Below are positions 11,746-27,129 of a stretch of 64,000 nt of DNA, in pieces. The DNA is taken from assembly GCA_973895155.1 (NCBI GenBank), contig OZ316898.1, positions 8,915,079 to 8,979,078 on the forward strand, given 5' to 3'. The notes below the pieces were generated by a model, which worked only from the letters and a program-made list of their open reading frames with translations, was not told where the DNA came from and searched no databases. The stretch is from Marsupella aquatica (taxonomy: Eukaryota; Plantae; Marchantiophyta). The position numbers and the translations under genes were made by a program. The first letter of the stretch is position 1. Each line of letters opens with the position of its first letter.

Positions 11746-11833
11746 GACATGTCTGATTCCAAACTAATTGACATAGACTCCCTCACTTTGACATGTCTAA
11801 TTCCAAACTAAATGACATAGACTCCCTCACTCT
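11746..11833. repeat. 44-bp tandem duplication just 3' of the transposase stop
   Basis: GACATGTCTGATTCCAAACTAATTGACATAGACTCCCTCACTTT followed by a near-identical second copy. Confidence 0.85.
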
Positions 11834-11862: not shown

Positions 11863-14800
11863 TTACTCAACAATCCCTTCCATGTAGGTTTTGAGTGTTT
11901 TCAAAACATTCTTGGGAATGGTCAAACCTCTATCAATTATATTTTCTTCTCTAGAGCGTGACTTGAATCCATACATAGCAGAATTAGCAAATTACCAACG
12001 TTCAGTGGCACTGTCAAACCCAGGATCCACCTCCCAAGTCTTAGTGGTCTGAAAGCAACGTGAATATCGCACATGATCCGGTGCATCATGCTTACCATGT
12101 TTAGGCCTCCACCATTGCACTTGGAACATAGGAGCATACCGTGTACTAGTAGGAGAATTCTCATTGCATTGCAAGTCTCCTAAGGGAACTTCATGGTTTG
12201 GGTCCACAACACCCAAAGCTCTCACCAACCAGAAATATTCTTTCCCATTCTTCTTTTCCCATTCATCCTCTGGACGGAGAAATACAAAGTGACCCTCTTG
12301 AATGTCCTGCAGAGGAATCCAATGTGCAAGTTCTCGCTCGTGTCGAGCGCCAACAAATGTTGCAGCTTGATCCTCCATCTCTTCCAGGTACTCATTCTGA
12401 AGCTCCACCATTTGTGGATTCTATGTACTACTACTAGGCTCCCCCAATGGTTCAGAGGTTCCTGTACTATTAACCTTGTAACCAGTTCCGTGGTTGGTTT
12501 TTGGCCAAAATTCATATGTCAATGCTAACTGTATTTCTGCCTCCCCTTCAATTGTAAGCTCCCCAGATTATACTTGCACCACCATCTCCCAATATTTCAC
12601 CAAAGGAAACCGCTCACGATATGCTATAGAGGTCTCATCCTTACAACTCTTCTTCAAAAACTCAATGTAACGATTAAGGAATGGGATGATTTCTTCAACC
12701 TTGCCTCGTACATCCCCGGAGATGGGCTTTGCATATGGTTGAGCTTCTGGTAAAATGAGAGCATTGGTGCTGGAATCAGTTCTCCAAATGGACCTTCCAG
12801 TTGGAGGGTACCAAGGTTGTTTCACATGTGCTTTGTATTGATATATTGGAACATTATCTCTCATAGAGAAAAGAAATGCCACTGGTTTTGAGTGACCCTC
12901 TATGTCTTTTACCTTGAAAGTTTTCAAAAACTCTTTGTAAGCTGCAACCTCTTGGATCAACCGTGGGACAGGATGAATGCTTTCACACTCCCAAACCTCA
13001 GCCATCAACCCCAAGAGGGTAGAAACCTCCTTGTACTTCACTTGGTTGGATACTTTTGAAAACAATGCATCGACATCCTCATGGGTGTGACCAACCATGA
13101 GAAACGACATCTGCACTATTTCAAAAACCCCTCTACTAACAAGCTCACTGCAAAATGCCATCAAGTACTGGTTTTTGTTATCTTTCCCTGAATTATCCAT
13201 TTGCAAGGTCAGGTGCCTTGGCAATGGTTTGAAAGAGGTAGACGTAGCCTTGGGATCAACACCAAAGTCGTCTTGGTCATCTTCAGCTCCTTGAAATCTA
13301 GCAATTGAGACTTTTTTGGGTTCTAAGTAACCTGCGAGAAATGCTTCAAACTCCAAAAGAGATTGAAAAATTGGCCTCATTGCAGCCCAATATAATCCTT
13401 CAAGGAGGTCTCCAGATTTGTCCCCCTTGTAATCCTCCAGATCTCTAAGGCACTTTGCCAATGATGTCACTGTGAAGTCTGCATCTCCCGGCCAAAGCCC
13501 AGTGAAACTGAAGTGAGCATACACTCTGGGATCCCTTCCATGGGTCAACATCCCAGTGAGCGCAATGGGGAGCGGTTGACCACTACCAGACAATGATTTA
13601 GGAGTGGGGACCAACCTAGGGATCCATGTCTTGGCCTAGTCCATCTTGTCATGTATAATGCAAAGATAGTTCTCAGGATCCTTCTTCGCAAGAACCCTAT
13701 GAGCATAGTAAACATATCTCCTAGACATTTGCTCACGAAGATGGCGAGCTCTTCTTTCCTCAATCTCTAAACGCTCTTTCTTTCTCTTCTCCCGCATCAA
13801 CTGATCTTTGAACTCAGTGCAAAGTGTACACTTTGCTAATGCACTTCCCTTGTGAAAGTCAAAATTCATGAAGGACTCACTCCAGAGTTTATACATAGTG
13901 TTTTCACTCACCTTCATGTAGCCATCTAATTCCATTTTTGAGTATACCTCCTCAAAAATATCTTTCTTCGTGAAACAAGATGGAAGTCTGTACTCAACCG
14001 TGTCAGTCCCGTGAGACCCTCCATAGGGAAGATGTGGCATGGGTTCTCCGTTTTGGGTTAGAATGGACTCCAACAAAGCACGAGCATGCAAGGTGCTTCC
14101 TCGTGTCTTGTGTGAACCCTTGTTTCTGTGGAATCCAACCGTGCAACCTGCTTCATATTGATTTTTATAATCATAATACTTGGCAGTGCTGAATCCATGC
14201 ATTTTAATAAATGCACCCTTGCAAACAAGTCTACTTCTTACAACGAAATATCCTTTTGTCTCCACTTCCTTCTCCCTACAGCCAAAAAGAGTGAGAATGT
14301 GACTGGTTTTGTTGTCGCTTGACATCCCATGGTATTCCCTCCTTATCGCCTATAGGTCTTCTCTGGGCATGTTGAGGCAACACTTCAACTTACAACAACC
14401 TTCTCTTTGGATGGAGTCGATTTCCTCCTCTGTGATTTTCAGTATGGCCCAAGACTCCAAGTGCTTCTTCCTTTTTTCATCTGGGTTGACCTTCGTTCTC
14501 TTGATGAAATTATACGGGCGTTTCGAAAACTCAGTGTCACCTTTCATATCTACCTCTAGATGATCTCGACCATCAATAATTGGTTTCGGAGAAACCTCTT
14601 CAATGAGATCCAGAAGAAAAATACCCCTTGGTATCAGCAGAAGTGAACGGACGGCCCACCTAACAAGACCAGGCACTCATGGGTAGATATTTGGGAAAAA
14701 TAGAGGGTCAATCACGCGTGTGACAGCAACCCCAACGTGATCTGGTCCAAGAACATCATCATCAATTGCACCTGACTCGAAAGGAACTGTGATGATGCCA

Positions 14801-15569
14801 ACCCCCACTTTGGTCCGATTATCCTTAGCATACAATTCCACCTCCTCGATCATCCAATTAGAACGCAAACTATAATCCTTGAAATTATAATTTGAAAAAA
14901 CATCCCGTGTGGACAGATCGTTTAGCATATCCTGGGAAGAACTCCTCCGAGTAACATCCTTTAAATTCCAGAATACAAAAGTGTCCAATGCTTCCGAACG
15001 GTATCGGCTCCATTGTGAGGAAAGGGTAACCTCTCCCTTCCTTGAAAAACTTCACATATTTTCACACTAATCCTAGAAGTGCCAAGTCTTTCATTGTGAC
15101 AGGTTTCATCGGGATTCGTCTTGAACACAAATCCACGAGCCACAATCTGATTGCCAATCCAGAGCTCGACTTCAACGCCAGATATAATCGAGTCTCCAAA
15201 ACTTCCCACCAAAGATTTGTCTGGTACAAAACCGGGAACCGTATCCTTTGTAGAACAAGAGGCATCCATTTGTGTTGTCGCTGGAGTTGACTGTGACTTC
15301 AAATATGCAAAAGAGGCATCCCAAATAATGCAGGAGTCGACAACATCAAACAAGGTCCTGATCGGCGGCAAAGGGTAAGGAATTTCCCATGATCCCTCAT
15401 AGCACTTCTCAATGAGAACTCCTATACGATTACTTCCCAAATCAACATTACGCACTGAGTCACCCGGGTCAACCTTGAGGACGGTCCCGCAAGAACTTCC
15501 ACTCCATCGATTACGAGGCAAACCTTGTCCCCTCGAAAGAAAATCCCCATTTTGAAAACGTGGTCCGAA
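11863..15569 (-). pseudogene. Sola-like DDD transposase (DUF7869-type core) with three N-terminal Tnp1/DUF8039-like repeats and a C-terminal beta-rich domain; disrupted
   Basis: ORF-track pieces 14677-14988, 14350-14676, 13636-14325, 12568-13614 and 11992-12411 are all one frame, separated by single stops (14677, 14350, 13636, 12568, 12421, 11992), and the frame runs on to TAA at 11863. One frameshift near 14990. Motifs: CCKLKC, VCKGAFIKMHGFS, KCTLC, IIHDKMD*AK (D1), LTLQMDNSGKDNKN (D2), FLMVGHTHEDVDALFS (D3). Confidence 0.8.
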
Positions 15570-16189
15570 CTGTTGGATGTAGTTACCTCGAGATGATCTC
15601 AAGGTAAAGTGACTACAAAAACAAACCAAAAAACCCAAGTGTAGAAGTTTATCCCACAAATTGTGTGATAGAGAAAATATGAAACTCTTCTACCTCGAGA
15701 CGATCTCGAGGTAGAAGAGGGACCAAAAACTCCAATATGTAAAAATTCAGAAGTATTTAGCTTGAGACGATCTCGAGGTAAAATATGAAATCTCACTATA
15801 TAGCGAATTCAGATTCTATACCTCCGACTCTCTACAAACTCAATTATAAGAAGGAAAACCGAATGCACCACTAGAAATAAGGCAAAAGTGAATAAGTTTG
15901 AGGATCAAACTTATGACTCGAGATGATCTCGAGCCAAAAAGGACATTGTATTTGACAAAGAAACTATTATGAATAATAAGCCACCCAAAATAAGAACATA
16001 TAAATGGCTCTAGATGATCTAGAGGAATGATTTGGTGCAATTAAGAAAGTAGGCTCCTAGTCTACTTCCAGACACTGAGAAATAGCTTCTAAAAGGCCAT
16101 CAAATAGAGGGAAAAGGCTTCCAAATGGATTTTGACCGACACTAGTATAAGCTGAAAAGGTTTGGTTTTCTAAAAGATAGGAGCTCAAT

Positions 16190-16950
16190 TATTTTAGACC
16201 TCTTTCAAGGCTTAAAATGAGAATTTCTCGAAATATCCTAAACACAAACGTAGAGTCCACAACCCTTGAAAAGAACAACAGAAAGAGATCAGAGTAGAAA
16301 TCTAGAGCCAAAGAGAGGGAGAGGGAGAGGGAGAGAGAGCAGAGAGAGAGCAGAGAGAGGCAGAGGGAGAAACGAGCGAGCAATGAAACGAAATGAGAAG
16401 ATGGACCAGCTGGAGACCAAAGAGAAGCAATATATAAAACCCTGACAGACAAAAAGGCCAATAAGACGGCTTGGTTGAACTTGTGTCACGGCTAAACTCG
16501 CGACAGGGCTGAAGTACGGATAACAATAATGACAACACGTGTGACCGTAATAATGACTGTAGCACCCAGGCAGGTTGCGTGGCAGCCTGCCTGAGCCTAC
16601 ACGAGCCCTGGCACGGTTGGCACGGCCAAGGCTGACCCCCGAGGGGCTTATAGTGGCTTCAGGGGTTTTGAATTCCCCATTTTCACATTCGCCTCCTCGT
16701 CTCTTCGCCTCCTTGCCTCCTCGCGTCCCTTGCCTCCTTGCCTCTAGATTGTTTCGCGCTCTTGCATCGAGATACTTGTATTAGCCTCGAGATTGCACAG
16801 GGTCGAGATTAGGTTTTTTCCTCGAGATTTTATAGAGTCAAGATTTTGTATTTTGGCTCGAGCTTCGATAGGGTCAAGGTTTTCTGTTTAGGCTCGAGAT
16901 TTGTTTTTAAGTTCTCAGCCCGTAGTACGTTCCTCTCTTCACCAGCCATG
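16190..16950. promoter_or_regulatory. Putative bidirectional promoter between the transposase and the cargo gene
   Basis: GA-rich tract at 16310-16370 (CT-rich leader on the minus strand), TATATA at ~16431, a GC-rich core, and a CT-rich leader on the plus strand at 16690-16745 before the ATG at 16948. Confidence 0.45.
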
Positions 16951-19900
16951 TCAACTGTTGTAGATTTCTCCAAGGAGGACTTCGTTGAGTACAACCTTGC
17001 AACCATTGGTGAAGAGCTTCAGACCCATCTAGACTCAGCGCATCAGATCCATCGCACCATTAAACGTAATTCATCATCTTTGTTTTGTTCAGGTTTAACT
17101 CGAGATCGTCTCGAGCTTCAATTGGTCCACTTGTTTCTGGATTCCTTGGATGCAGTTGAGGCTCGAGATCATCTCGAGCCTATTGATGTTTTCTGCAATA
17201 CTTTGCTTCAAAAGTTGTGATCTATCAATTGATTTTGCATTTGATGTAAGTGGCATGAGGCTCGAGATCGTCTCGAGCCAATATGCAATTCCTGCATGTG
17301 ACCTAGTGAGATTTCTTCAAGTTGGAAACCCTTATCCTTCAAAAGTGAAACATAATATCCAAAATATCTAAAATTTCCTTCCTCTAGGGACTTCTGTACC
17401 CTCCAACTCATTCTGATCATTAACATCCGAACGGGTTTGTGGGTATCAGAAGTCAAATGGAGAAAGTGGATTTGAATCATTGATTGAATATGATGTTCAT
17501 TGTTGAGTATGATATTTGGATCCCTCGTTTGACATGTTAGGCCAATTTCTTCCAGTTGGAAGGACTCCATGTCGTCTACTTGAATTACTAATATCCTTTT
17601 CATTGTGATCCAAGCTTGCCTTTTGGACCACTTTCTTAGTCCTCCAACTCGTTTGTGAAGATGACAAACCACTGAGTTAGAGGGTTTTGAATGTGGTCGA
17701 ATAGGTGACATTGGATCATTCTTGAAAATGTTGTTCGTTAAATTTGACTGGTTCATGATATGCAATGGAATAAAACCTCAACTGATATATATGAGGATCG
17801 AGATCATCTTGAGCCCTTGTCTTTTTCTTTTAAATAGATGGTGGCTCGAGATCATCTCGAGCCTATTGTGTTTCCTAACTATTGTGTTATCTTTTTAGAT
17901 TTCTTGGGTTTGAAATCTCTTTTTAAATTCCATGGATGAAATGGCATTGGAACATGTCAGACTATTAAACTTAAAAGGAAGATCGAGATCATCTCGAGCC
18001 ACCTATTTGTTTCTTGGTTTTGTAGTACATGTTTCTGACAATTGCTACATTTTGGCTGTACCAGGTGCAAAATTGGGATCGCCTAATTTGGTAGTCGAAG
18101 ATGAACATGCAATTGAGGTTTCCTGCCCTGGACAGGGTTTATTTGGATTCTGTTGGGCCATTGAGCTTGCTAAAACTGAAGACATGGAAGGAACTATTAT
18201 TTGTGTGAAGACGAGGTCTCCATCAGTCGATCCTCTAGTGTGCAGCCTTCTAGGGCCTGTTGTTTCTATTGTGACGAGTAACGGTAAGGACATGGTTTTG
18301 ACGGTGGAGAACCATGAGACAGGGAAGTGGACTCTAATTAGACTTCACGCCAAAAACTACTCTTGCGATCTTAACATTGAACGTGCAGCCAGGAAACAAC
18401 TGAGCGTGATATCAATGGGGTTCTTCCCCGAGGGTTTTACTACAAGTAATTTGCTAGAAGATACTCCTATATCTGGAGTGGACATAATTTTTGGATTCCT
18501 TTATTGTCGAAAGTATGGGTTTGATCGAGATGATGCATTCACGACTCCTTTCACGTGGAAGGTTTTGAGACTAATTTTGGAATCCAAATTGGGGGAGTTT
18601 GAATCCATATCCCCTGATTTTGTGTTTGGATCCGGAGAATTTGACGATGATGCTTGTAAAAAGTGGGTGTTGTCTCATCGGAGACAAACAGGTAAATTGA
18701 AATTTATAGCTGCGGGAGACAAGACGTCCGGTTTGGACAAAAAGGATGCAAAGGTGTCTCAAAAGAGGAAGAGGGTTGAGAAACCCGAGAGCAAAGCGAA
18801 GAAGGCTCCACCTCAAAAAAAGTCTGCGCCGCCCAAGGTAGATCTCATTCCGGCATCTTCCTCGGGTGTGAATGCACATACCGATGATGATGGCACTCCA
18901 GGAGATGCTCCGGGAGAAAAGAGCATTAAGGAAGGAGCCAAAGTTCTTAAGGAGATTGAGGAGTATTACACATTTGGCATGAATGAAACTTTTGACATTC
19001 CTGTCACTAGTATAGATTCGTCGTCTGCAGTTTTGGTATATAGGATGTTCAATAAAGACCATGCCATGGAGGTCGCAAAATCCATGGTTAGAAACCCTGG
19101 AATGGTACCAGCTGTGGCGGATTTAATTCCGTATTCAAGAGAGTTTGTAGTTACTCCATTATGAGAATACTGTTGAGGATCGAAAGGAGTTCGAGTGGGG
19201 TGTTAAGAATAAGAAGGTGCAGTTCCTTGCAATCAGTGGACAACACTCGGCAAAGGCAGCTGTTTGGATCATAGGTTGGGCTAAGAGCGATGCAAAGTTG
19301 AAGGAGGTCACGAAGAGTCTGCAATATCGAAAGTCACGAATTCTTTCGGACAGAACTCCAAGAACAATACTTGCTCAACACTCACAAAGGGCAAATGCTG
19401 TTAATAAGACCATGGAGTATGAGTCCTGTTTTCTTGATACTATGGTCCATGCCCGTCGACAGTTTGACGAGTGTGGCCGTCCGGAGAGACCCGTGATTGG
19501 GTCCAATAGACTAACGGATCATCAAAAGTTCCAGGTAAATTCGAACTCAAATCCACTTCTAGCTCGAGATTGTCTCGAGCCTCGAGGTCTGTATTTGATT
19601 TATCTTCATGTATTCTCCCATAAATTTTACCATAGTTCCTTAATTCTACCTCGAGATCATCTCGAGCCTCAGATTTTCTTTGTACTGTTTGGATCAGGAT
19701 TTTATGGCCCTTGCCAAAATAACAACTGGAAAATCCGATCTGAGGAATATTTTTTGGTTGCTATTTTCGGATGAGAACCTCTTCCGAACTTGGAGACAAA
19801 TGTGCATCGATTGGGTCAAGGGACTTCTTCCGAATGGTCTAGGGGAGTTAGGTTCAAAAATAAATGGGAAATCCCGGACAACAAAAATGATTACGCCGGC

Positions 19901-21962
19901 ATTATTTAGATGCTTTGAAGGAGACCTGAGTAGTGACGACATTCTGAAAGTTTTTACTGCCGTTCAACAACAAAAGGTTTTATTGAAGAAAGACCCGGCC
20001 AACAAATCTGATGTTCAATCAATGAGTGATATGGCTCATACTTTCAAAGTCATGACCAAGCTGAGGGCAAAAATTGTGGAGTACTTTGTTTTGAAGTATC
20101 CGGATTGGTTTGCTAATTCACTCACTTGGTTTGAGCTAACTCAATTTTTGCCTGCATTTATGGATCGTGGTGAGTTGCTGAAACTTAGACAACTTGCTGG
20201 AGAGGTTTGGATTTCCAACCTCCTAAAAAGAAATAGGCCAAAAGACCCATTTCTGCAAAGTCTCATTGTTAGGCTTGAGCAGATATATTGCAAGGTATTT
20301 GGCGGGTTGCCTTCAATGGAGGATACTCCTTATCGCATATTTTTTAGCGATAATTTGATGAGGACAATGAAGCCTGAGATTGTTGACTCGGTGCAAAGGA
20401 CGTGCCCACTCTCCATTGTTGATTTTGGTCGTCTTCGACAACGGCAGTGGACAGATGCCAAATTTTTTGTCTTGCTGGAGTATTGTTTGCAGATGGCGAA
20501 CTCGACGGAGCTCTTAGTAATCTTTTTTGTCCGTCAAGGCCCATTGATAGGCCAGATTCATAGTGCCTTTGAAAAGATTCGTCGTGAGAAGAAAGTCCAC
20601 ATGAAGCTAGAGTACGAGAGCTATTACCGTGATCAGCTGCCCAAGGAGGAGGGAGATTTTCTCATTGGAGCCCGAGACTCAATCATCTTTGGGGGAATTT
20701 GTTGTGAAGAGGAACCAGTCTGGTCCCAAATTTTCTTTGATGACTTTTATGCGTTCTAGAACTACAGTGAGAAGTGGGACAAAGACTTCACAGTCTTGCC
20801 TTTGAAGGCCCCTACTGGGAACAACAAAGACCAATCAAAGGGGAAAGATAAGCTCGATGAATCCACTGTTGATGTTGAAGTTTTGGAGAAGATGGCCCCA
20901 TCTTATGAGATGGTCGGTCGGCGTGGTGGCTTTGTAAATCTGAGAGCAAAGCCTTTGCGAATGACAAAGCGTCTTGTTGATTATTTCTCGTGCCCAGGTC
21001 ATACAGTGTTGGATTTCTTCTCTGGAGGACAGACATTGAAAGCTTGTGTCATTCTTGGTCGGGATTGTTTTGTGTATTCGGACACAGCTCAAGAGATGGA
21101 ATTCACAGAAGCCTTTGCTCAGCTCCTTCATGACAACAAGCAGGTTTTATATGTGCCACCCAAGGAGCCGTTACCATCTGAGGAAATTACTGCCGGTCCC
21201 CTTGTTGTAATAGAAGAGGCGGCCTTAGACATAGCTCCAGTGGAAGCCAGTGTTTATGAGGAAGTATTTGCGGAGAATTTAGAGCATCGCAAAATGGAGG
21301 GCCCAAAAATCACAAGCTACATGGAAGAGGAGGGTGAAATACTGCCTGAATTTGGAAATGATGCTCGAGATGATCTCGACGTTCTAGGTGTTCCTTCATC
21401 GGGTGACCTTGGGGATGCACAACATGAACAACAGTCTTCAACCTTGGATGTTGGCTGGGAATCCACCTTGAAGGATGCAATTAGCCAACCAATTCCAAGC
21501 CCTCCTCAACTGGATGAGATTTTCTCTACTAAGAAAGCTAGTGGCTGCCATACTCCCCCTCAGGACGAGACAGGTGCATCGTCCTCTCCCTTGGACCAAA
21601 TGTTTTGCGCTTCAGAGAATAAGCTTGTTTTCCCAGATTCTTCTACTGGAATCCCCGTAATTCTCCCTTTTGTTAGGAAACCAGGGACTGAAATTGGTAG
21701 AACTGGTTACAAATCACTCAAAGCAAGTGCTACTCATTATGTTTGGACTGATGGACCGTCAAAAGGTCAACACGTCTCTATAGAGCAATCTGAGAAGATT
21801 ATTCGATCTAGAAAGTATAGGAAGGATAAGTTCAAATTAGTGCCAGTTTGGTCTGAGCCAGCTCTTGTTGAGACCCTTCCCGGAGGGATAAATTTGGACA
21901 TCCAAAACCAACTAGGAGATAACCTTCTAGATGAATTTGGGTCTTTCAGCACGGGAGGTTGA
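16948..21962 (+). pseudogene. Spliced cargo gene: ParB/DGQHR-like domain plus an N4C/N6A (N6_N4_Mtase-like) DNA methyltransferase-like region; disrupted
   Basis: Frameshift near 19160. The phase-0 intron 19535-19697 joins HQKFQ to DFMAL. The in-frame TAG at 20757 is followed directly by ORF 20796. ParB-like segment FDIPVTSID..YRMFNKDHAMEVAKSMVRNPG...VQFLAISGQHSAKAA. MTase C-terminal signature KPLRMTKRLVDYFSCPGHTVLDFFSGGQTLKACVILGRDC (20949-21070). The 5' exons (from 16948) are tentative. Confidence 0.62.
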
Positions 21963-22228
21963 AACCCAAGTTAGTTTGAACAGTCTTGAAATTCAGCCGT
22001 CTAAATTATTATGTCTACCTTCACAGAAATAGGCGGGCCCTTACCAGTTGTGGAGTGCGTCGACAATAATCTCCAAAGATGTCCTGAGATTTCTTCAACT
22101 ACTGACCTTCAACCAACAATAGGTATGACGTTGACTGTTATTCATTCACTTGTGATGCTCGAGATCGTCTCGAACATTCCTTTATTTTATCTCCCACAAT
22201 TCTAACATTGGTGTTCCTTCTTTGCAAG

Positions 22229-23297
22229 ACCCTTGCCTCCACTTCACGGTCCGATCAGACGGAAGCTATTGATTCTTGACCTCAACAAAATGTGTTGGGA
22301 TTCTGTCAAAACGCCAAGTTCTGGACCACGCCGTAGTGCAACAAGTGTCAAGGGTGTCCACTGGGGGAGACGTGGAGGGTTTAACTTTATGTATGTTGAA
22401 CGACCCCATCTTCATGAGTCCTTAATCGCAGCTTTTTTGTTATTTGATGTTGCCATTTGGACTTGTGCAAGGAAACCCAGGACGGATGAAATGATTCATT
22501 TGATCTTCAGTCAAGAAGAGCGAGAGCAATTCAAGTTTATTCTCACACAAGAAGATACATTCGATACTGGAATCCAGAGGCCTGACATTACCGATGGGAA
22601 GGAAAATATTCATTTGAAGGATTTGAGGGTGGTTTGGAAACGTTATGGTGGATTATACGACGAAACCGATACACTCATTCTTGATGACACTCCAATGAAG
22701 GCATTTGCAAATCCAGAGAATTGTGGGTTGTTTCCTTCCTCATTTTTGCATCACTCCACAGATGATACATTCTTTCCAGAAATAGTATGGCCTCTGCTCA
22801 GGAAATTGTATCATGCCTTCAATCTTCAGCACTACCTTTTTATCAATCATCCAAAGTGGTCTATGATAAATGTTTTAGCGGACAGAGATCAACAGGCTGC
22901 CCGGGAGGCTGCCATTTATGCATTGTTGACGGAGTGGTGGGGTAGTATGGTATGGGTTCATTCGGTTATCCATACAGTCTTGGATGTCACAGCGGACGAA
23001 ATTCCTTGGGATGTCAAGAATGAAGTGCAACAATTACCACCAATGGAGGAATTGACGGAGGAGGCGATCAACGACCTTGCAAAGACGTTAATTGGATATC
23101 AGTACACAGGACCCTATAGAGACAATCATCGGGGATTTGTTTCGGAAGTCTTGAGGTGTAGGGACCTCACCACGAAGTTCTGGAATAGGAAGCCTCTCGA
23201 TTTCTGCAATCGTGATATGAAATATGACCCGTCAGAGTCTAGATTTACTTGCTCAAATGAATTTTGCGCGGTGGAGGAGCATGAGATTTGGGTCTAG
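22229..23297 (+). CDS. FCP1/SCP-like (NIF) HAD-family phosphatase domain; transposon cargo, possibly the last exon of the upstream gene
   Basis: RKLLILDLNK (motif I variant), ERPHLHESL, FDVAIWTCA, KDLRVVW and TLILDDTPMKAFANPENCGLFP match NIF-domain proteins. Preceded by a probable intron 22123-22228 that contains a palindrome. Confidence 0.75.
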
Positions 23298-23837
23298 ATT
23301 ATCTCGACCCTACACTGAACAGTTACAATGTGAGTTGTAGATATACATATTCTTACTCAAAAAAAAGTGAAGCTATGCGTACTATCCATTTGAGTCTAGA
23401 TGCTGTTGATCCTCTTTTATTTGTAGATATGTTCTCAGAAAAAGGTTATTTGGGTCTCGACCCTATACAAAGGGAATAGCTAGAGATATAGATTCAACAA
23501 CGGGTCAAAATTATGTGGACCCTACATTTGGGTCAAGATAATCTTGACATAAATTTTTACATAGTAATTGATATACATTCAACAACCGGTCAAAACCATC
23601 TAGAGCCTGCATTGGGGCAGACCTGGTCTCGACCCTGTAAAAATAAGTTTTTTACTTTTATAATACATTTCTGGTTTACCTTTCGTGTTTGTGTAACTTG
23701 GTTATCACGGGTCATTTGAATTTATTATATTGTCTTATTCTATTTTTCATTGTTTATATTGTATATAATAAGAACACTTTATTATCTTTTAATAAATAAG
23801 TATTTATAATTGATAACTGAATTATTTAATTAATAAT

Positions 23838-27057: not shown

Positions 27058-27129
27058 GTTTAGACGCATCTCCCATGTGAAGAAACCGGTGCCCATCCTC
27101 AGTTTAGACGCATCTCCCATGTGAAGAAA
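27058..27129. repeat. 28-bp direct repeat
   Basis: GTTTAGACGCATCTCCCATGTGAAGAAA at 27058 and 27102. Confidence 0.85.

What the first reader, a model, noticed from the sequence alone, without database searches (positions are those of the whole stretch)
14554..23548. parS-like 17-bp palindrome CTCGAGA-N3-TCTCGAG dispersed through the element, mostly in introns and leaders
Seen: about 19 copies with a fixed 7-3-7 geometry over 9 kb, and none noticed in the other ~50 kb. Five lie upstream of the transposase coding region, six in the 5' introns of the cargo gene, two inside intron 19535-19697, one in intron 22123-22228 and several near the 3' end; a few are tolerated in coding sequence (14554, 21364). 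The flanks differ between copies, so this is not a tandem repeat. Inference: binding sites for a dimeric element-encoded protein (the ParB-like, MTase-like or DUF8039 domains), kept by selection.
Basis: partly seen in the sequence, partly recalled or inferred. Interest (0 to 1): 0.88.

Follow-up and report, generated by a model that had tools for sequence, protein, structure and literature searches.

The report
Transposon's own palindrome docking sites
A liverwort-type jumping gene carries about 19 copies of one 17-21 bp palindrome in its leaders and introns, and distant relatives keep the same kind of palindrome in the same introns, so these are probably docking sites for a protein, as already proposed for algal transposons.

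Summary
CTCGAGA-N3-TCTCGAG occurs 8 times exactly and 17 times within 2 mismatches, all between 14554 and 22174, against about 0 to 0.1 expected. Fifteen of the 17 sites are non-coding (p = 3e-6).

The real unit is an 8-1-8 palindrome, usually with GG/CC flanks (21 nt). There is also a decayed 36-bp tandem array of half-sites in the cargo gene's leader, and degenerate copies at the 3' end.

The new evidence is comparative. Cargo-gene relatives with only 28-41% protein identity carry multi-copy palindromes of the same geometry and the same TCG(A/C)GA core in the homologous introns, often as tandem arrays. One relative has a different 21-mer, including one copy at the homologous coding position.

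In intron 1, 13 of 20 CpGs lie inside the sites. This fits selection on a cis-element.

The best reading is docking sites for an element-encoded dimeric DNA-binding protein. That resembles VANC targets and the arrays proposed for algal ParB-type accessory genes, but binding is untested.

A ParB/Srx fold is supported in a relative. DUF8039 is not supported. The methylase-like and phosphatase-like domains lack their catalytic motifs.

This scan has already reported the same family on other DNA of this genome. I class it as a new member of a known kind.

The parts
11992..15553 (-). Transposase gene (approximate coding span). Contains DUF7869 at 12568-13614. ATG near 15553.
   Evidence: Pfam DUF7869, E = 1e-44. 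ORFs. Translations. The atlas search gives DUF7869 clusters from animals.
14554..14570 (.). Palindrome copy inside transposase coding sequence (2 mismatches). Read as GRDHLEV.
15587..16024 (.). Five palindrome copies (15587, 15694, 15761, 15917, 16008) in the leader upstream of the transposase ATG. Three have TAC..GTA flanks that extend the dyad to 25-29 bp.
16738..16901 (+). Array of about 8 direct half-sites (CTCGAGAT / GGGTCGAGAT type) in the cargo gene's 5' leader. It is a decayed tandem repeat of 35-36 bp period.
   Evidence: The family majority has C at 16766, which makes that half-site CTCGAGAT.
16949..23297 (+). Cargo gene. Exon 1 is 16949-17066, with intron 1 at 17067-18064. The next exon, 18065-19534, encodes a PH-like N-domain, a basic linker and a ParB/Srx-like fold; in this copy it is broken near 19140-19151. 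An intron follows at 19535-19697. Exon 19698-22122 encodes a helical domain and the methylase-like part; in this copy it has a TAG at 20757. An intron follows at 22123-22228. Exon 22229-23297 is CTD-phosphatase-like (NIF).
17099..17998 (.). Six palindrome copies in intron 1 (17099, 17162, 17261, 17797, 17845, 17982), mostly GGCTCGAGATCRTCTCGAGCC.
   Evidence: 13 of 20 intron CpGs lie in these sites. The family majority has C at 17810.
19563..19666 (.). Two palindrome copies in intron 19535-19697, 87 nt apart.
   Evidence: As RNA, the two copies pair with each other.
21364..21380 (.). Palindrome copy in cargo coding sequence (ARDDLDV), in the variable acidic linker. It is the only copy with reversed centre base.
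   Evidence: It is homologous in position to the coding copy of the L001-type motif.
22158..22174 (.). Palindrome copy in intron 22123-22228.
23288..23640 (.). Cluster of degenerate copies (GGGTCTAGATTATCTCGACCC, GGGTCTCGACCC and similar) downstream of the phosphatase-like ORF, near the element's right end.

Best explanation
The palindromes are a cis-element of this transposon family. They are dyad-symmetric DNA sites, 8-1-8 with core TCG(A/C)GA and usually 21 bp with GG/CC flanks.

Inferred mechanism. A dimeric sequence-specific protein made by intact copies of the family docks on these sites in trans. The protein thereby recognises the family's own copies and acts on their chromatin or transcription. 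The sites sit where sequence is free to vary: leaders, introns, the 3' end, and one tolerant linker in the coding sequence. They multiply by tandem duplication.

The likeliest binder is the cargo protein, which combines a PH-like domain, a ParB/Srx-like fold and a catalytically dead methylase-like domain. The transposase is the second candidate.

What is shown: the sites are non-random, confined to the element, biased to non-coding DNA, and conserved in type and position across deeply diverged relatives.

What is inferred: that they act as DNA rather than RNA, that the binder is element-encoded, and what the binding does.
For: - Enrichment and confinement.
- 15 of 17 sites are non-coding, binomial p = 3e-6.
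- Relatives with DNA carry palindromes in the homologous introns:
  - L006 (28% identity) has GGCTCGAGAG-W-CTCTCGAGC, 4 + 3 copies, in the two introns flanking the homologous exon.
  - L002 (34%) has CATCG(A/C)GAT-S-ATC(T/G)CGATG, 4 copies, in the intron homologous to 19535-19697.
  - L005 (30-33%) has six tandem 27-nt palindromes with the same GAGGCTCG..CGAGCCTC outer arms, in the intron homologous to intron 1.
  - L008 (38%) has CpG-decayed CTCGAGAT-W-ATCTCGAG copies.
- L001 (41%) has a different, imperfectly palindromic 21-mer in four copies. One is at the coding position homologous to 21364.
- CpG observed/expected in intron 1 is 0.24 outside the sites, while 13 of 20 CpGs lie inside them.
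- The family majority restores the motif at 17810 and 16766.
- Direct half-site arrays fit protein binding better than hairpins.
- The fold of the cargo protein's relative is ParB/Srx: Foldseek top hits have probability about 1, and VIA-align Z is 7.9-5.1 for PadC, KorB, pNOB8 ParB-N and Srx.
- Published analogues:
  - VANC21 binds short motifs in introns and intergenic DNA of its own VANDAL, and the targets form tandem repeats that differ between relatives (PMC5735166).
  - Red-algal Plavaka PAG3, which is ParB-like, lies next to tandem arrays of inverted repeats, and self-binding was proposed (bioRxiv 10.1101/2025.02.11.637652).
  - Ectocarpus Sola1-1 carries a ParB-methylase gene on the strand opposite the transposase (PMC12477816).
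Against: - No binding data exist.
- No helix-turn-helix or other DNA-reading domain was identified. The ParB/Srx N-domain alone does not read sequence.
- The ParB CTP-box arginine is absent.
- Two related clades show no such palindrome: L003/L007 (short introns) and L004.
- Motif similarity does not track protein similarity. L006 at 28% identity has a near-identical site, while L001 at 41% has a different one. Simple co-evolution is therefore not shown.
- All sites seem to lie in transcribed DNA, so RNA-level action is not excluded.
- 15 of 16 informative sites have the same centre base relative to the direction of transcription. A symmetric dimer would not require that.
- Earlier notes of this scan report private palindromes in unrelated transposon families of this genome (a MULE, a gypsy element). 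That may point to a host-side mechanism.
Confidence: 0.55

Rival explanations
1. RNA-level element. Because the sites are self-complementary, copies in one pre-mRNA form hairpins or pair with each other. This would bridge intron ends or flank exons, and so tune splicing, intron retention or back-splicing, or feed small-RNA production.
For: - All sites lie in presumably transcribed DNA (leaders, introns, 3' end).
- In intron 19535-19697 the two copies pair into one long stem that brings the splice sites together (MFE -38.9 kcal/mol, z = -3.8).
- In L006, arrays flank one exon on both sides.
- In L001, where the motif is only a weak palindrome, copies occur in both orientations in one transcription unit.
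- The centre base follows the direction of transcription in 15 of 16 sites.
Against: - The direct half-site array at 16738-16901 cannot fold on itself.
- An RNA stem would need only complementarity, yet a specific core (TCG(A/C)GA) at fixed distance from the dyad is kept across lineages.
- There is no Rfam match.
- No RNA run was available, so nothing shows these stems form.
Confidence: 0.15
2. Host-factor sites. The palindromes are binding sites for a host transcription factor or chromatin protein that the element uses as promoter, enhancer or insulator modules, or as CpG-rich islands that resist methylation.
For: - The core is conserved across lineages whose own proteins have diverged to about 30% identity. 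A conserved host factor would explain that easily.
- The sites cluster around the divergent promoter region.
- Earlier notes of this scan report palindrome arrays in unrelated transposon families of the same genome (unchecked).
Against: - There is no copy in the other 54 kb of the window, which includes host genes.
- Lineage-specific variants exist (L005, L001).
- Most copies are deep in introns rather than at promoters.
Confidence: 0.15
3. Transposase-binding sites needed for excision and integration, like the subterminal repeats of En/Spm or Ac.
For: Degenerate copies cluster near the right end (23288-23640). Multi-copy short motifs are typical of subterminal transposase sites.
Against: - No site lies in the left 2.7 kb of the element.
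- The best copies are central, in introns and between the genes.
- Relatives keep them in cargo-gene introns.
Confidence: 0.08
4. No function. Hairpin-prone sequence spreads by slippage and tandem duplication, then hitch-hikes with a successful family.
For: Tandem arrays occur in L005, L006 and at 16784-16901. Contigs of other runs show deletions between copies.
Against: Type, geometry and intron position persist across lineages with unalignable introns. CpGs are kept inside the sites but lost around them.
Confidence: 0.05

Closest known systems
VANC anti-silencing proteins and their target motifs in Arabidopsis VANDAL (MULE) transposons (Hosaka et al. 2017, PMC5735166; Sasaki et al. 2023, PMC10398659)
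   Same: A short motif is confined to the element's own non-coding DNA (introns, intergenic and terminal regions). It has many copies, often as tandem repeats, and differs between related elements. It is read by an element-encoded accessory protein.
   Different: VANC motifs are 9-bp and non-palindromic. VANC has DUF1985/DUF287 domains, which are not found here. This element belongs to a different superfamily. Binding and hypomethylation are shown for VANC and untested here.
Sola1-1_Ec32 of Ectocarpus: giant Sola1 transposon with a ParB-like + N4C/N6A methylase accessory gene (PMC12477816)
   Same: The accessory gene is transcribed on the strand opposite the transposase. It combines a ParB-like and an N6_N4-methylase-like domain. 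The authors propose that the protein binds and marks its own element.
   Different: No cognate palindromes were described there. Here the methylase-like domain has DFGR where DPPY is expected, and a CTD-phosphatase-like part (DLNKM instead of DxDxT) follows. The host is a liverwort-type land plant.
Plavaka PAG3 of the red alga Bostrychia: ParB-like accessory protein with adjacent tandem arrays of inverted repeats (bioRxiv 10.1101/2025.02.11.637652)
   Same: A transposon-borne ParB-like protein is paired with arrays of inverted repeats in the same element, and self-binding was explicitly proposed.
   Different: PAG3 is fused to a 2OG oxygenase rather than a methylase-like domain. Its arrays are adjacent to the gene, not spread through its introns. 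The transposon superfamily differs.
Bacterial ParB-parS (and KorB/Noc) systems
   Same: Roughly 16-17-bp palindromic sites occur in several copies, and a ParB/Srx-fold N-domain is present in the candidate binder.
   Different: There is no ParA and no detected helix-turn-helix. The CTP-box arginine is absent. The setting is eukaryotic and intronic. No segregation role is conceivable here.

Membership tests
ParB-parS type system | ParB/Srx-fold N-terminal domain | tested here: met
   An AF2 model of P0067 (47% identical to window exon 18065-19164) was searched. Foldseek top hits are Srx, Noc, ParB and KorB (probability about 1, E = 0.008-0.03). VIA-align gives PadC Z 7.9, KorB 7.2 and pNOB8 ParB-N 6.1 over residues 312-468. 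Pfam finds nothing.
ParB-parS type system | CTP-binding GxxRxxA box | tested here: not met
   The window has ISGQHSAKAA and relatives have SGQHSARAA. The arginine position is Ser.
ParB-parS type system | Helix-turn-helix that reads parS | tested here: inconclusive
   Matches to KorB and ParB cover only their N-domains. The 200-residue helical domain at the start of exon 19698 gave no hit of its own.
ParB-parS type system | ParA partner ATPase | tested here: not met
   No ParA-type Pfam hit in any large ORF of the element.
ParB-parS type system | Several copies of a roughly 16-bp palindromic site | tested here: met
   17 copies of an 8-1-8 palindrome.
VANC-type anti-silencing module | Motif confined to non-coding DNA of the own element, including introns | tested here: met
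   15 of 17 sites are non-coding and none lies outside the element.
VANC-type anti-silencing module | Targets form tandem repeats that differ between related elements | tested here: met
   A 36-bp array in the window, a 40-bp array in L005 and 27-bp arrays in L006. L001 has a different 21-mer.
VANC-type anti-silencing module | VANC protein (DUF1985/DUF287) | tested here: not met
   No such Pfam hit.
VANC-type anti-silencing module | Protein binds the motif and removes DNA methylation | not testable with these tools
   No ChIP, EMSA or methylome data. No RNA run was found.
Sola1 transposon with ParB-methylase accessory gene | Accessory gene divergent from the transposase gene | tested here: met
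   The transposase is on the minus strand (ATG about 15553). The cargo gene is on the plus strand (ATG 16949).
Sola1 transposon with ParB-methylase accessory gene | N6_N4 DNA methylase domain | tested here: inconclusive
   In the window, PF01555 scores 25.8 bits against a cutoff of 26.7, and only the C-terminal motif I region matches. Relative P0024 scores 29.2 bits. DFGR/DFSR stands where DPPY is expected. Fold hits to methylases are weak.
Sola1 transposon with ParB-methylase accessory gene | Sola1 DDD transposase, terminal inverted repeats and target-site duplication | not tested
   Only DUF7869 was found. The termini were not defined here. The Sola1 assignment comes from earlier notes of the scan.

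The most novel reading that the evidence does not exclude
A land-plant transposon runs a self-recognition system unrelated to VANC. A fusion of a ParB/Srx fold with a catalytically dead DNA-methylase fold docks as a dimer on palindromes seeded through the element's own introns and leaders. It brings a pseudo CTD-phosphatase to the element's chromatin. This protects or boosts transcription of the family's copies only, and site variants define which sub-families respond.
Probability: 0.25. Interest if true: 0.8.

Novelty: new member of a known kind. Interest (0 to 1): 0.5.

Why it matters
If the sites are bound by the element's own protein, this would be a second, independently evolved case of a plant transposon that recognises its own copies through private motifs. 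VANC of Arabidopsis is the only one with experimental proof. It would also give the algal 'ParB-type accessory gene plus inverted-repeat array' hypothesis a tractable land-plant system.

The comparative series found here supplies ready-made specificity controls for EMSA or DAP-seq. It offers the same 8-1-8 geometry with variants at three positions, plus one lineage with a different 21-mer.

It also illustrates how enzyme folds without catalytic motifs (methylase-like, phosphatase-like) may be reused as DNA- or chromatin-targeting modules.

Tried and rejected
- Pfam does not support ParB or DUF8039/Tnp1 in the window's ORFs, even at E up to 5. ParB rests on fold only.
- A PDB sequence search of the ParB-like part gave only noise.
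- The first literature search, for Sola plus ParB plus methyltransferase, was mostly irrelevant, but it surfaced the Ectocarpus paper. A search for 'DUF7869' found no paper.
- The search for related loci on metagenome contigs failed once for lack of conserved columns. It then found no relative.
- P0047, a 2937-aa phage-like protein, was a spurious hit.
- P0071 (Calypogeia fissa) could not be fetched. The P0067 and P0068 contigs had no DNA served.
- No RNA run holds the stretch. Only contigs could be laid, so splice sites, expression and transcription start sites are inferred.
- The read-laying table is truncated (40 of 523 differences shown), so site-versus-flank substitution rates could not be computed.
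- The fold search of the methylase-like half gave only generic alpha/beta and methylase hits, Z no higher than 7.2.
- I rejected the idea that the sites are strictly private and co-evolve with the protein, because the CTCGAGA core is shared by lineages at 28-38% identity.
Exons were searched separately by reference.

Full report
**Observation**

The pattern CTCGAGA-N3-TCTCGAG has 8 exact matches in the window, against 0 in 100 shuffles. Within two mismatches it has 17 matches against a shuffle mean of 0.10. All lie between 14554 and 22174.

Two further 3-mismatch copies lie in the element (16742, 23292). Two chance-level ones lie outside it.

Inspection shows that the unit is really an 8-1-8 palindrome, CTCGAGAT-N-ATCTCGAG. 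In the cargo gene's introns it is flanked by GG..CC, giving a 21-nt dyad. In the transposase leader it is flanked by TAC..GTA, extending the dyad to 25-29 bp.

A half-site weight matrix finds 50 of 61 hits, and every hit of 11 bits or more, inside 14000-23700. These hits include:
- about 8 direct half-sites at 16738-16901, which Tandem Repeats Finder reads as 3.3 copies of a decayed 35-36-bp unit;
- a cluster of degenerate GGGTC..GACCC copies at 23288-23640.

No site lies in the left 2.7 kb of the element.

**Setting**

The stretch holds two divergent genes.

On the minus strand is a transposase with DUF7869 (E = 1e-44) and an ATG near 15553.

On the plus strand is a cargo gene with its ATG at 16949. 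I analysed it exon by exon, by reference.
- Exon 1 is 16949-17066.
- Intron 1 is 17067-18064. It is GT..AG and in frame with the next exon.
- The large exon from 18065 is homologous to P0066-P0071.
- Intron 19535-19697 is shared in position with L001, L002, L007 and L008.
- Exon 19698-22122 follows.
- Intron 22123-22228 follows.
- The last exon matches NIF/CTD-phosphatase (E = 8e-15).

On this model 15 of 17 sites are non-coding, although non-coding DNA is only 32% of the span (binomial p = 3e-6).

This copy is not intact. It has a TAG at 20757-20759, where all laid contigs of three runs read G at 20758. It also has a frame change plus a TAG near 19140-19151, relative to the homologues.

Contigs of runs from three coded organisms lay on the stretch in hundreds to thousands of pieces at 85-100% identity. 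The family is therefore multi-copy.

A homologue is annotated in the liverwort Calypogeia fissa. Earlier notes of this scan call the genome a liverwort and the element Sola1-type.

**Comparative evidence**

This is the main new result. A search of 1.84 billion representatives with exon 19698-20756 found only 65 relatives, the best at 41% identity. A search with the upstream exon found six. I fetched the DNA wherever it was served.

| Locus | Protein identity to window | What it carries |
|---|---|---|
| L006 | 28% | GGCTCGAGAG-W-CTCTCGAGC, four times in intron 1 and at least three times in the next intron, at 27-bp period |
| L002 | 34% | CATCG(A/C)GAT-S-ATC(T/G)CGATG, four times, in the intron homologous to 19535-19697 |
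| L005 | 30-33% | Six tandem 27-nt palindromes, GGAGGCTCGCGAA-A-TTCGCGAGCCTCC, at 40-bp period, in the intron homologous to intron 1. The outer arms match the window's (GAGGCTCG..CGAGCCTC). |
| L008 | 38% | Two CpG-decayed copies of CTCGAGAT-W-ATCTCGAG, one of them in the homologous intron |
| L001 | 41% | A different 21-mer, GGGTTGATCTAGTATAGACCC, only weakly palindromic. Two copies lie in the homologous intron, one in a later intron and one in coding sequence. |
| L003, L007 | 27-29% | No palindrome (short introns) |
| L004 | 33% | No such palindrome; unrelated tandem repeats only |

The coding copy in L001 sits at the position that aligns with the window's coding site 21364 (ARDDLDV against EREGLYEIN).

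Introns of proteins this diverged are otherwise unalignable. Persistence of the same geometry, core and location therefore argues for constraint.

Motif similarity does not follow protein similarity. The core is old and widely shared, with variants at three positions and one outlier lineage.

**Evidence within this copy**

In intron 1, 13 of 20 CpGs lie inside the sites, which make up about 10% of its length. CpG observed/expected outside the sites is 0.24.

Two of this copy's departures from the motif are the consensus letter in the family majority: T at 17810 and A at 16766.

**Candidate binder**

An AF2 model of P0067, which is 47% identical to the window's exon, has mean pLDDT 63, with the domains at about 80.

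Foldseek returns only ParB/Srx-fold proteins as its top hits (probability about 1, E = 0.008-0.03). VIA-align gives PadC Z 7.9, KorB 7.2, pNOB8 ParB-N 6.1 and Srx 5.7 over residues 312-468. The N-terminal 150 residues look PH/PTB-like, but only weakly (Z 4-5).

The ParB box reads GQHSAKA, so it lacks the arginine. No helix-turn-helix was detected.

The methylase-like assignment rests on a marginal Pfam hit in the window (25.8 against 26.7 bits), a passing hit in P0024 and weak fold hits. DFGR/DFSR stands where DPPY is expected.

The phosphatase-like part has DLNKM instead of DxDxT.

DUF8039/Tnp1 was not found.

**Mechanism**

The most likely reading is a family-specific docking site for a dimeric DNA-binding protein supplied in trans by intact copies. 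This parallels three published cases:
- VANC targets, which are motifs in introns and intergenic DNA, form tandem repeats and differ between relatives (PMC5735166);
- the proposal for red-algal Plavaka PAG3, a ParB-like protein next to inverted-repeat arrays;
- the Ectocarpus Sola1 ParB-methylase accessory gene.

A recent preprint also argues that transposases themselves act as sequence-specific transcriptional regulators of their own copies (10.64898/2026.08.24.746577). The transposase therefore stays a candidate binder.

**Rivals**

- RNA duplexes. The two copies in intron 19535-19697 pair with each other (z = -3.8). All sites appear to be transcribed. The centre base follows the direction of transcription in 15 of 16 informative sites.
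- A host factor. This fits the conserved core, and earlier notes report palindrome arrays in unrelated transposon families of this genome.
- Transposition sites. This is disfavoured by the absence of sites at the left end.
- Neutral slippage. This is disfavoured by the deep conservation and the CpG retention.

**Novelty and verdict**

The kind of system has been sketched in the literature for algae. This scan has also reported it several times on other DNA of the same genome.

This report adds, for this copy:
- a verified site map;
- the finding that the sites sit in homologous introns across lineages at about 30-40% protein identity;
- the shared 8-1-8 / TCG(A/C)GA core;
- the co-varying coding site;
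- the CpG evidence.

Binding is plausible and untested. I class it as a new member of a known kind.

Noticed in passing
window 20757-20759 and 19140-19151: This copy's cargo gene is broken. It has a TAG at 20757, where all laid contigs of three runs read G at 20758. It also has a frame change plus a TAG between '..DLIPYSRE' and '..LLHYENTVEDRK..' relative to the homologues. The supposed intron 19147-19216 is therefore a lesion inside one exon, not an intron.
   Followed up: partly
window 14554-22174: The centre base of the palindrome follows the direction of transcription. It is G on the + strand for all 6 sites on the transposase side. It is C (or T derived from C) for 9 of 10 informative sites on the cargo side. 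The exception is the coding site 21364. With C on the sense strand the site contains no ATG, which may matter in 5' leaders. Relatives L002 and L006 show both centres.
   Followed up: partly
window 15705/16771, 17185/17843, 19666/15709 (joints): Contigs of other runs join one motif copy directly to another. They skip 657 or 1065 bases, or change strand. This suggests recombination between the repeats creates deletion or rearranged derivatives of the element.
   Followed up: no
window 22233-23297; L001 3250-3300: The NIF/CTD-phosphatase-like part has DLNKM (window) or DLNKV (L001) where the catalytic DxDxT motif is expected. It is probably not an active phosphatase.
   Followed up: partly
window 20400-20450 (protein ..CPLSIVDFGRLRQRQW..): The methylase-like domain has DFGR (DFSR in relatives) at the strand where DPPY is expected. 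Motif I is kept as FFSGGQ. It looks like a pseudo-methylase.
   Followed up: partly
window 18065-18560 (model of P0067, residues 15-165): The N-terminal domain of the cargo protein models as a PH/PTB-like beta sandwich (Z 4-5, including an M18BP1 SANTA domain hit). The match is weak and its function is unknown.
   Followed up: no
window 16312-16370 and 16689-16744: A GA/CT microsatellite and an 8-bp TCGCCTCC repeat lie between the two divergent genes. A TATATAAAA box lies at about 16432. This is probably a bidirectional promoter region.
   Followed up: no
window 11746-11833 and 27058-27129: Two unrelated short tandem duplications were seen: a 44-bp unit in two copies just left of the transposase gene's 3' end, and a 28-nt exact repeat 44 bp apart.
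   Followed up: no
L004 2700-3330: A related cargo locus has a long intron filled with unrelated tandem repeats (95-bp, 11-bp and 29-bp units) but none of the palindromes.
   Followed up: no
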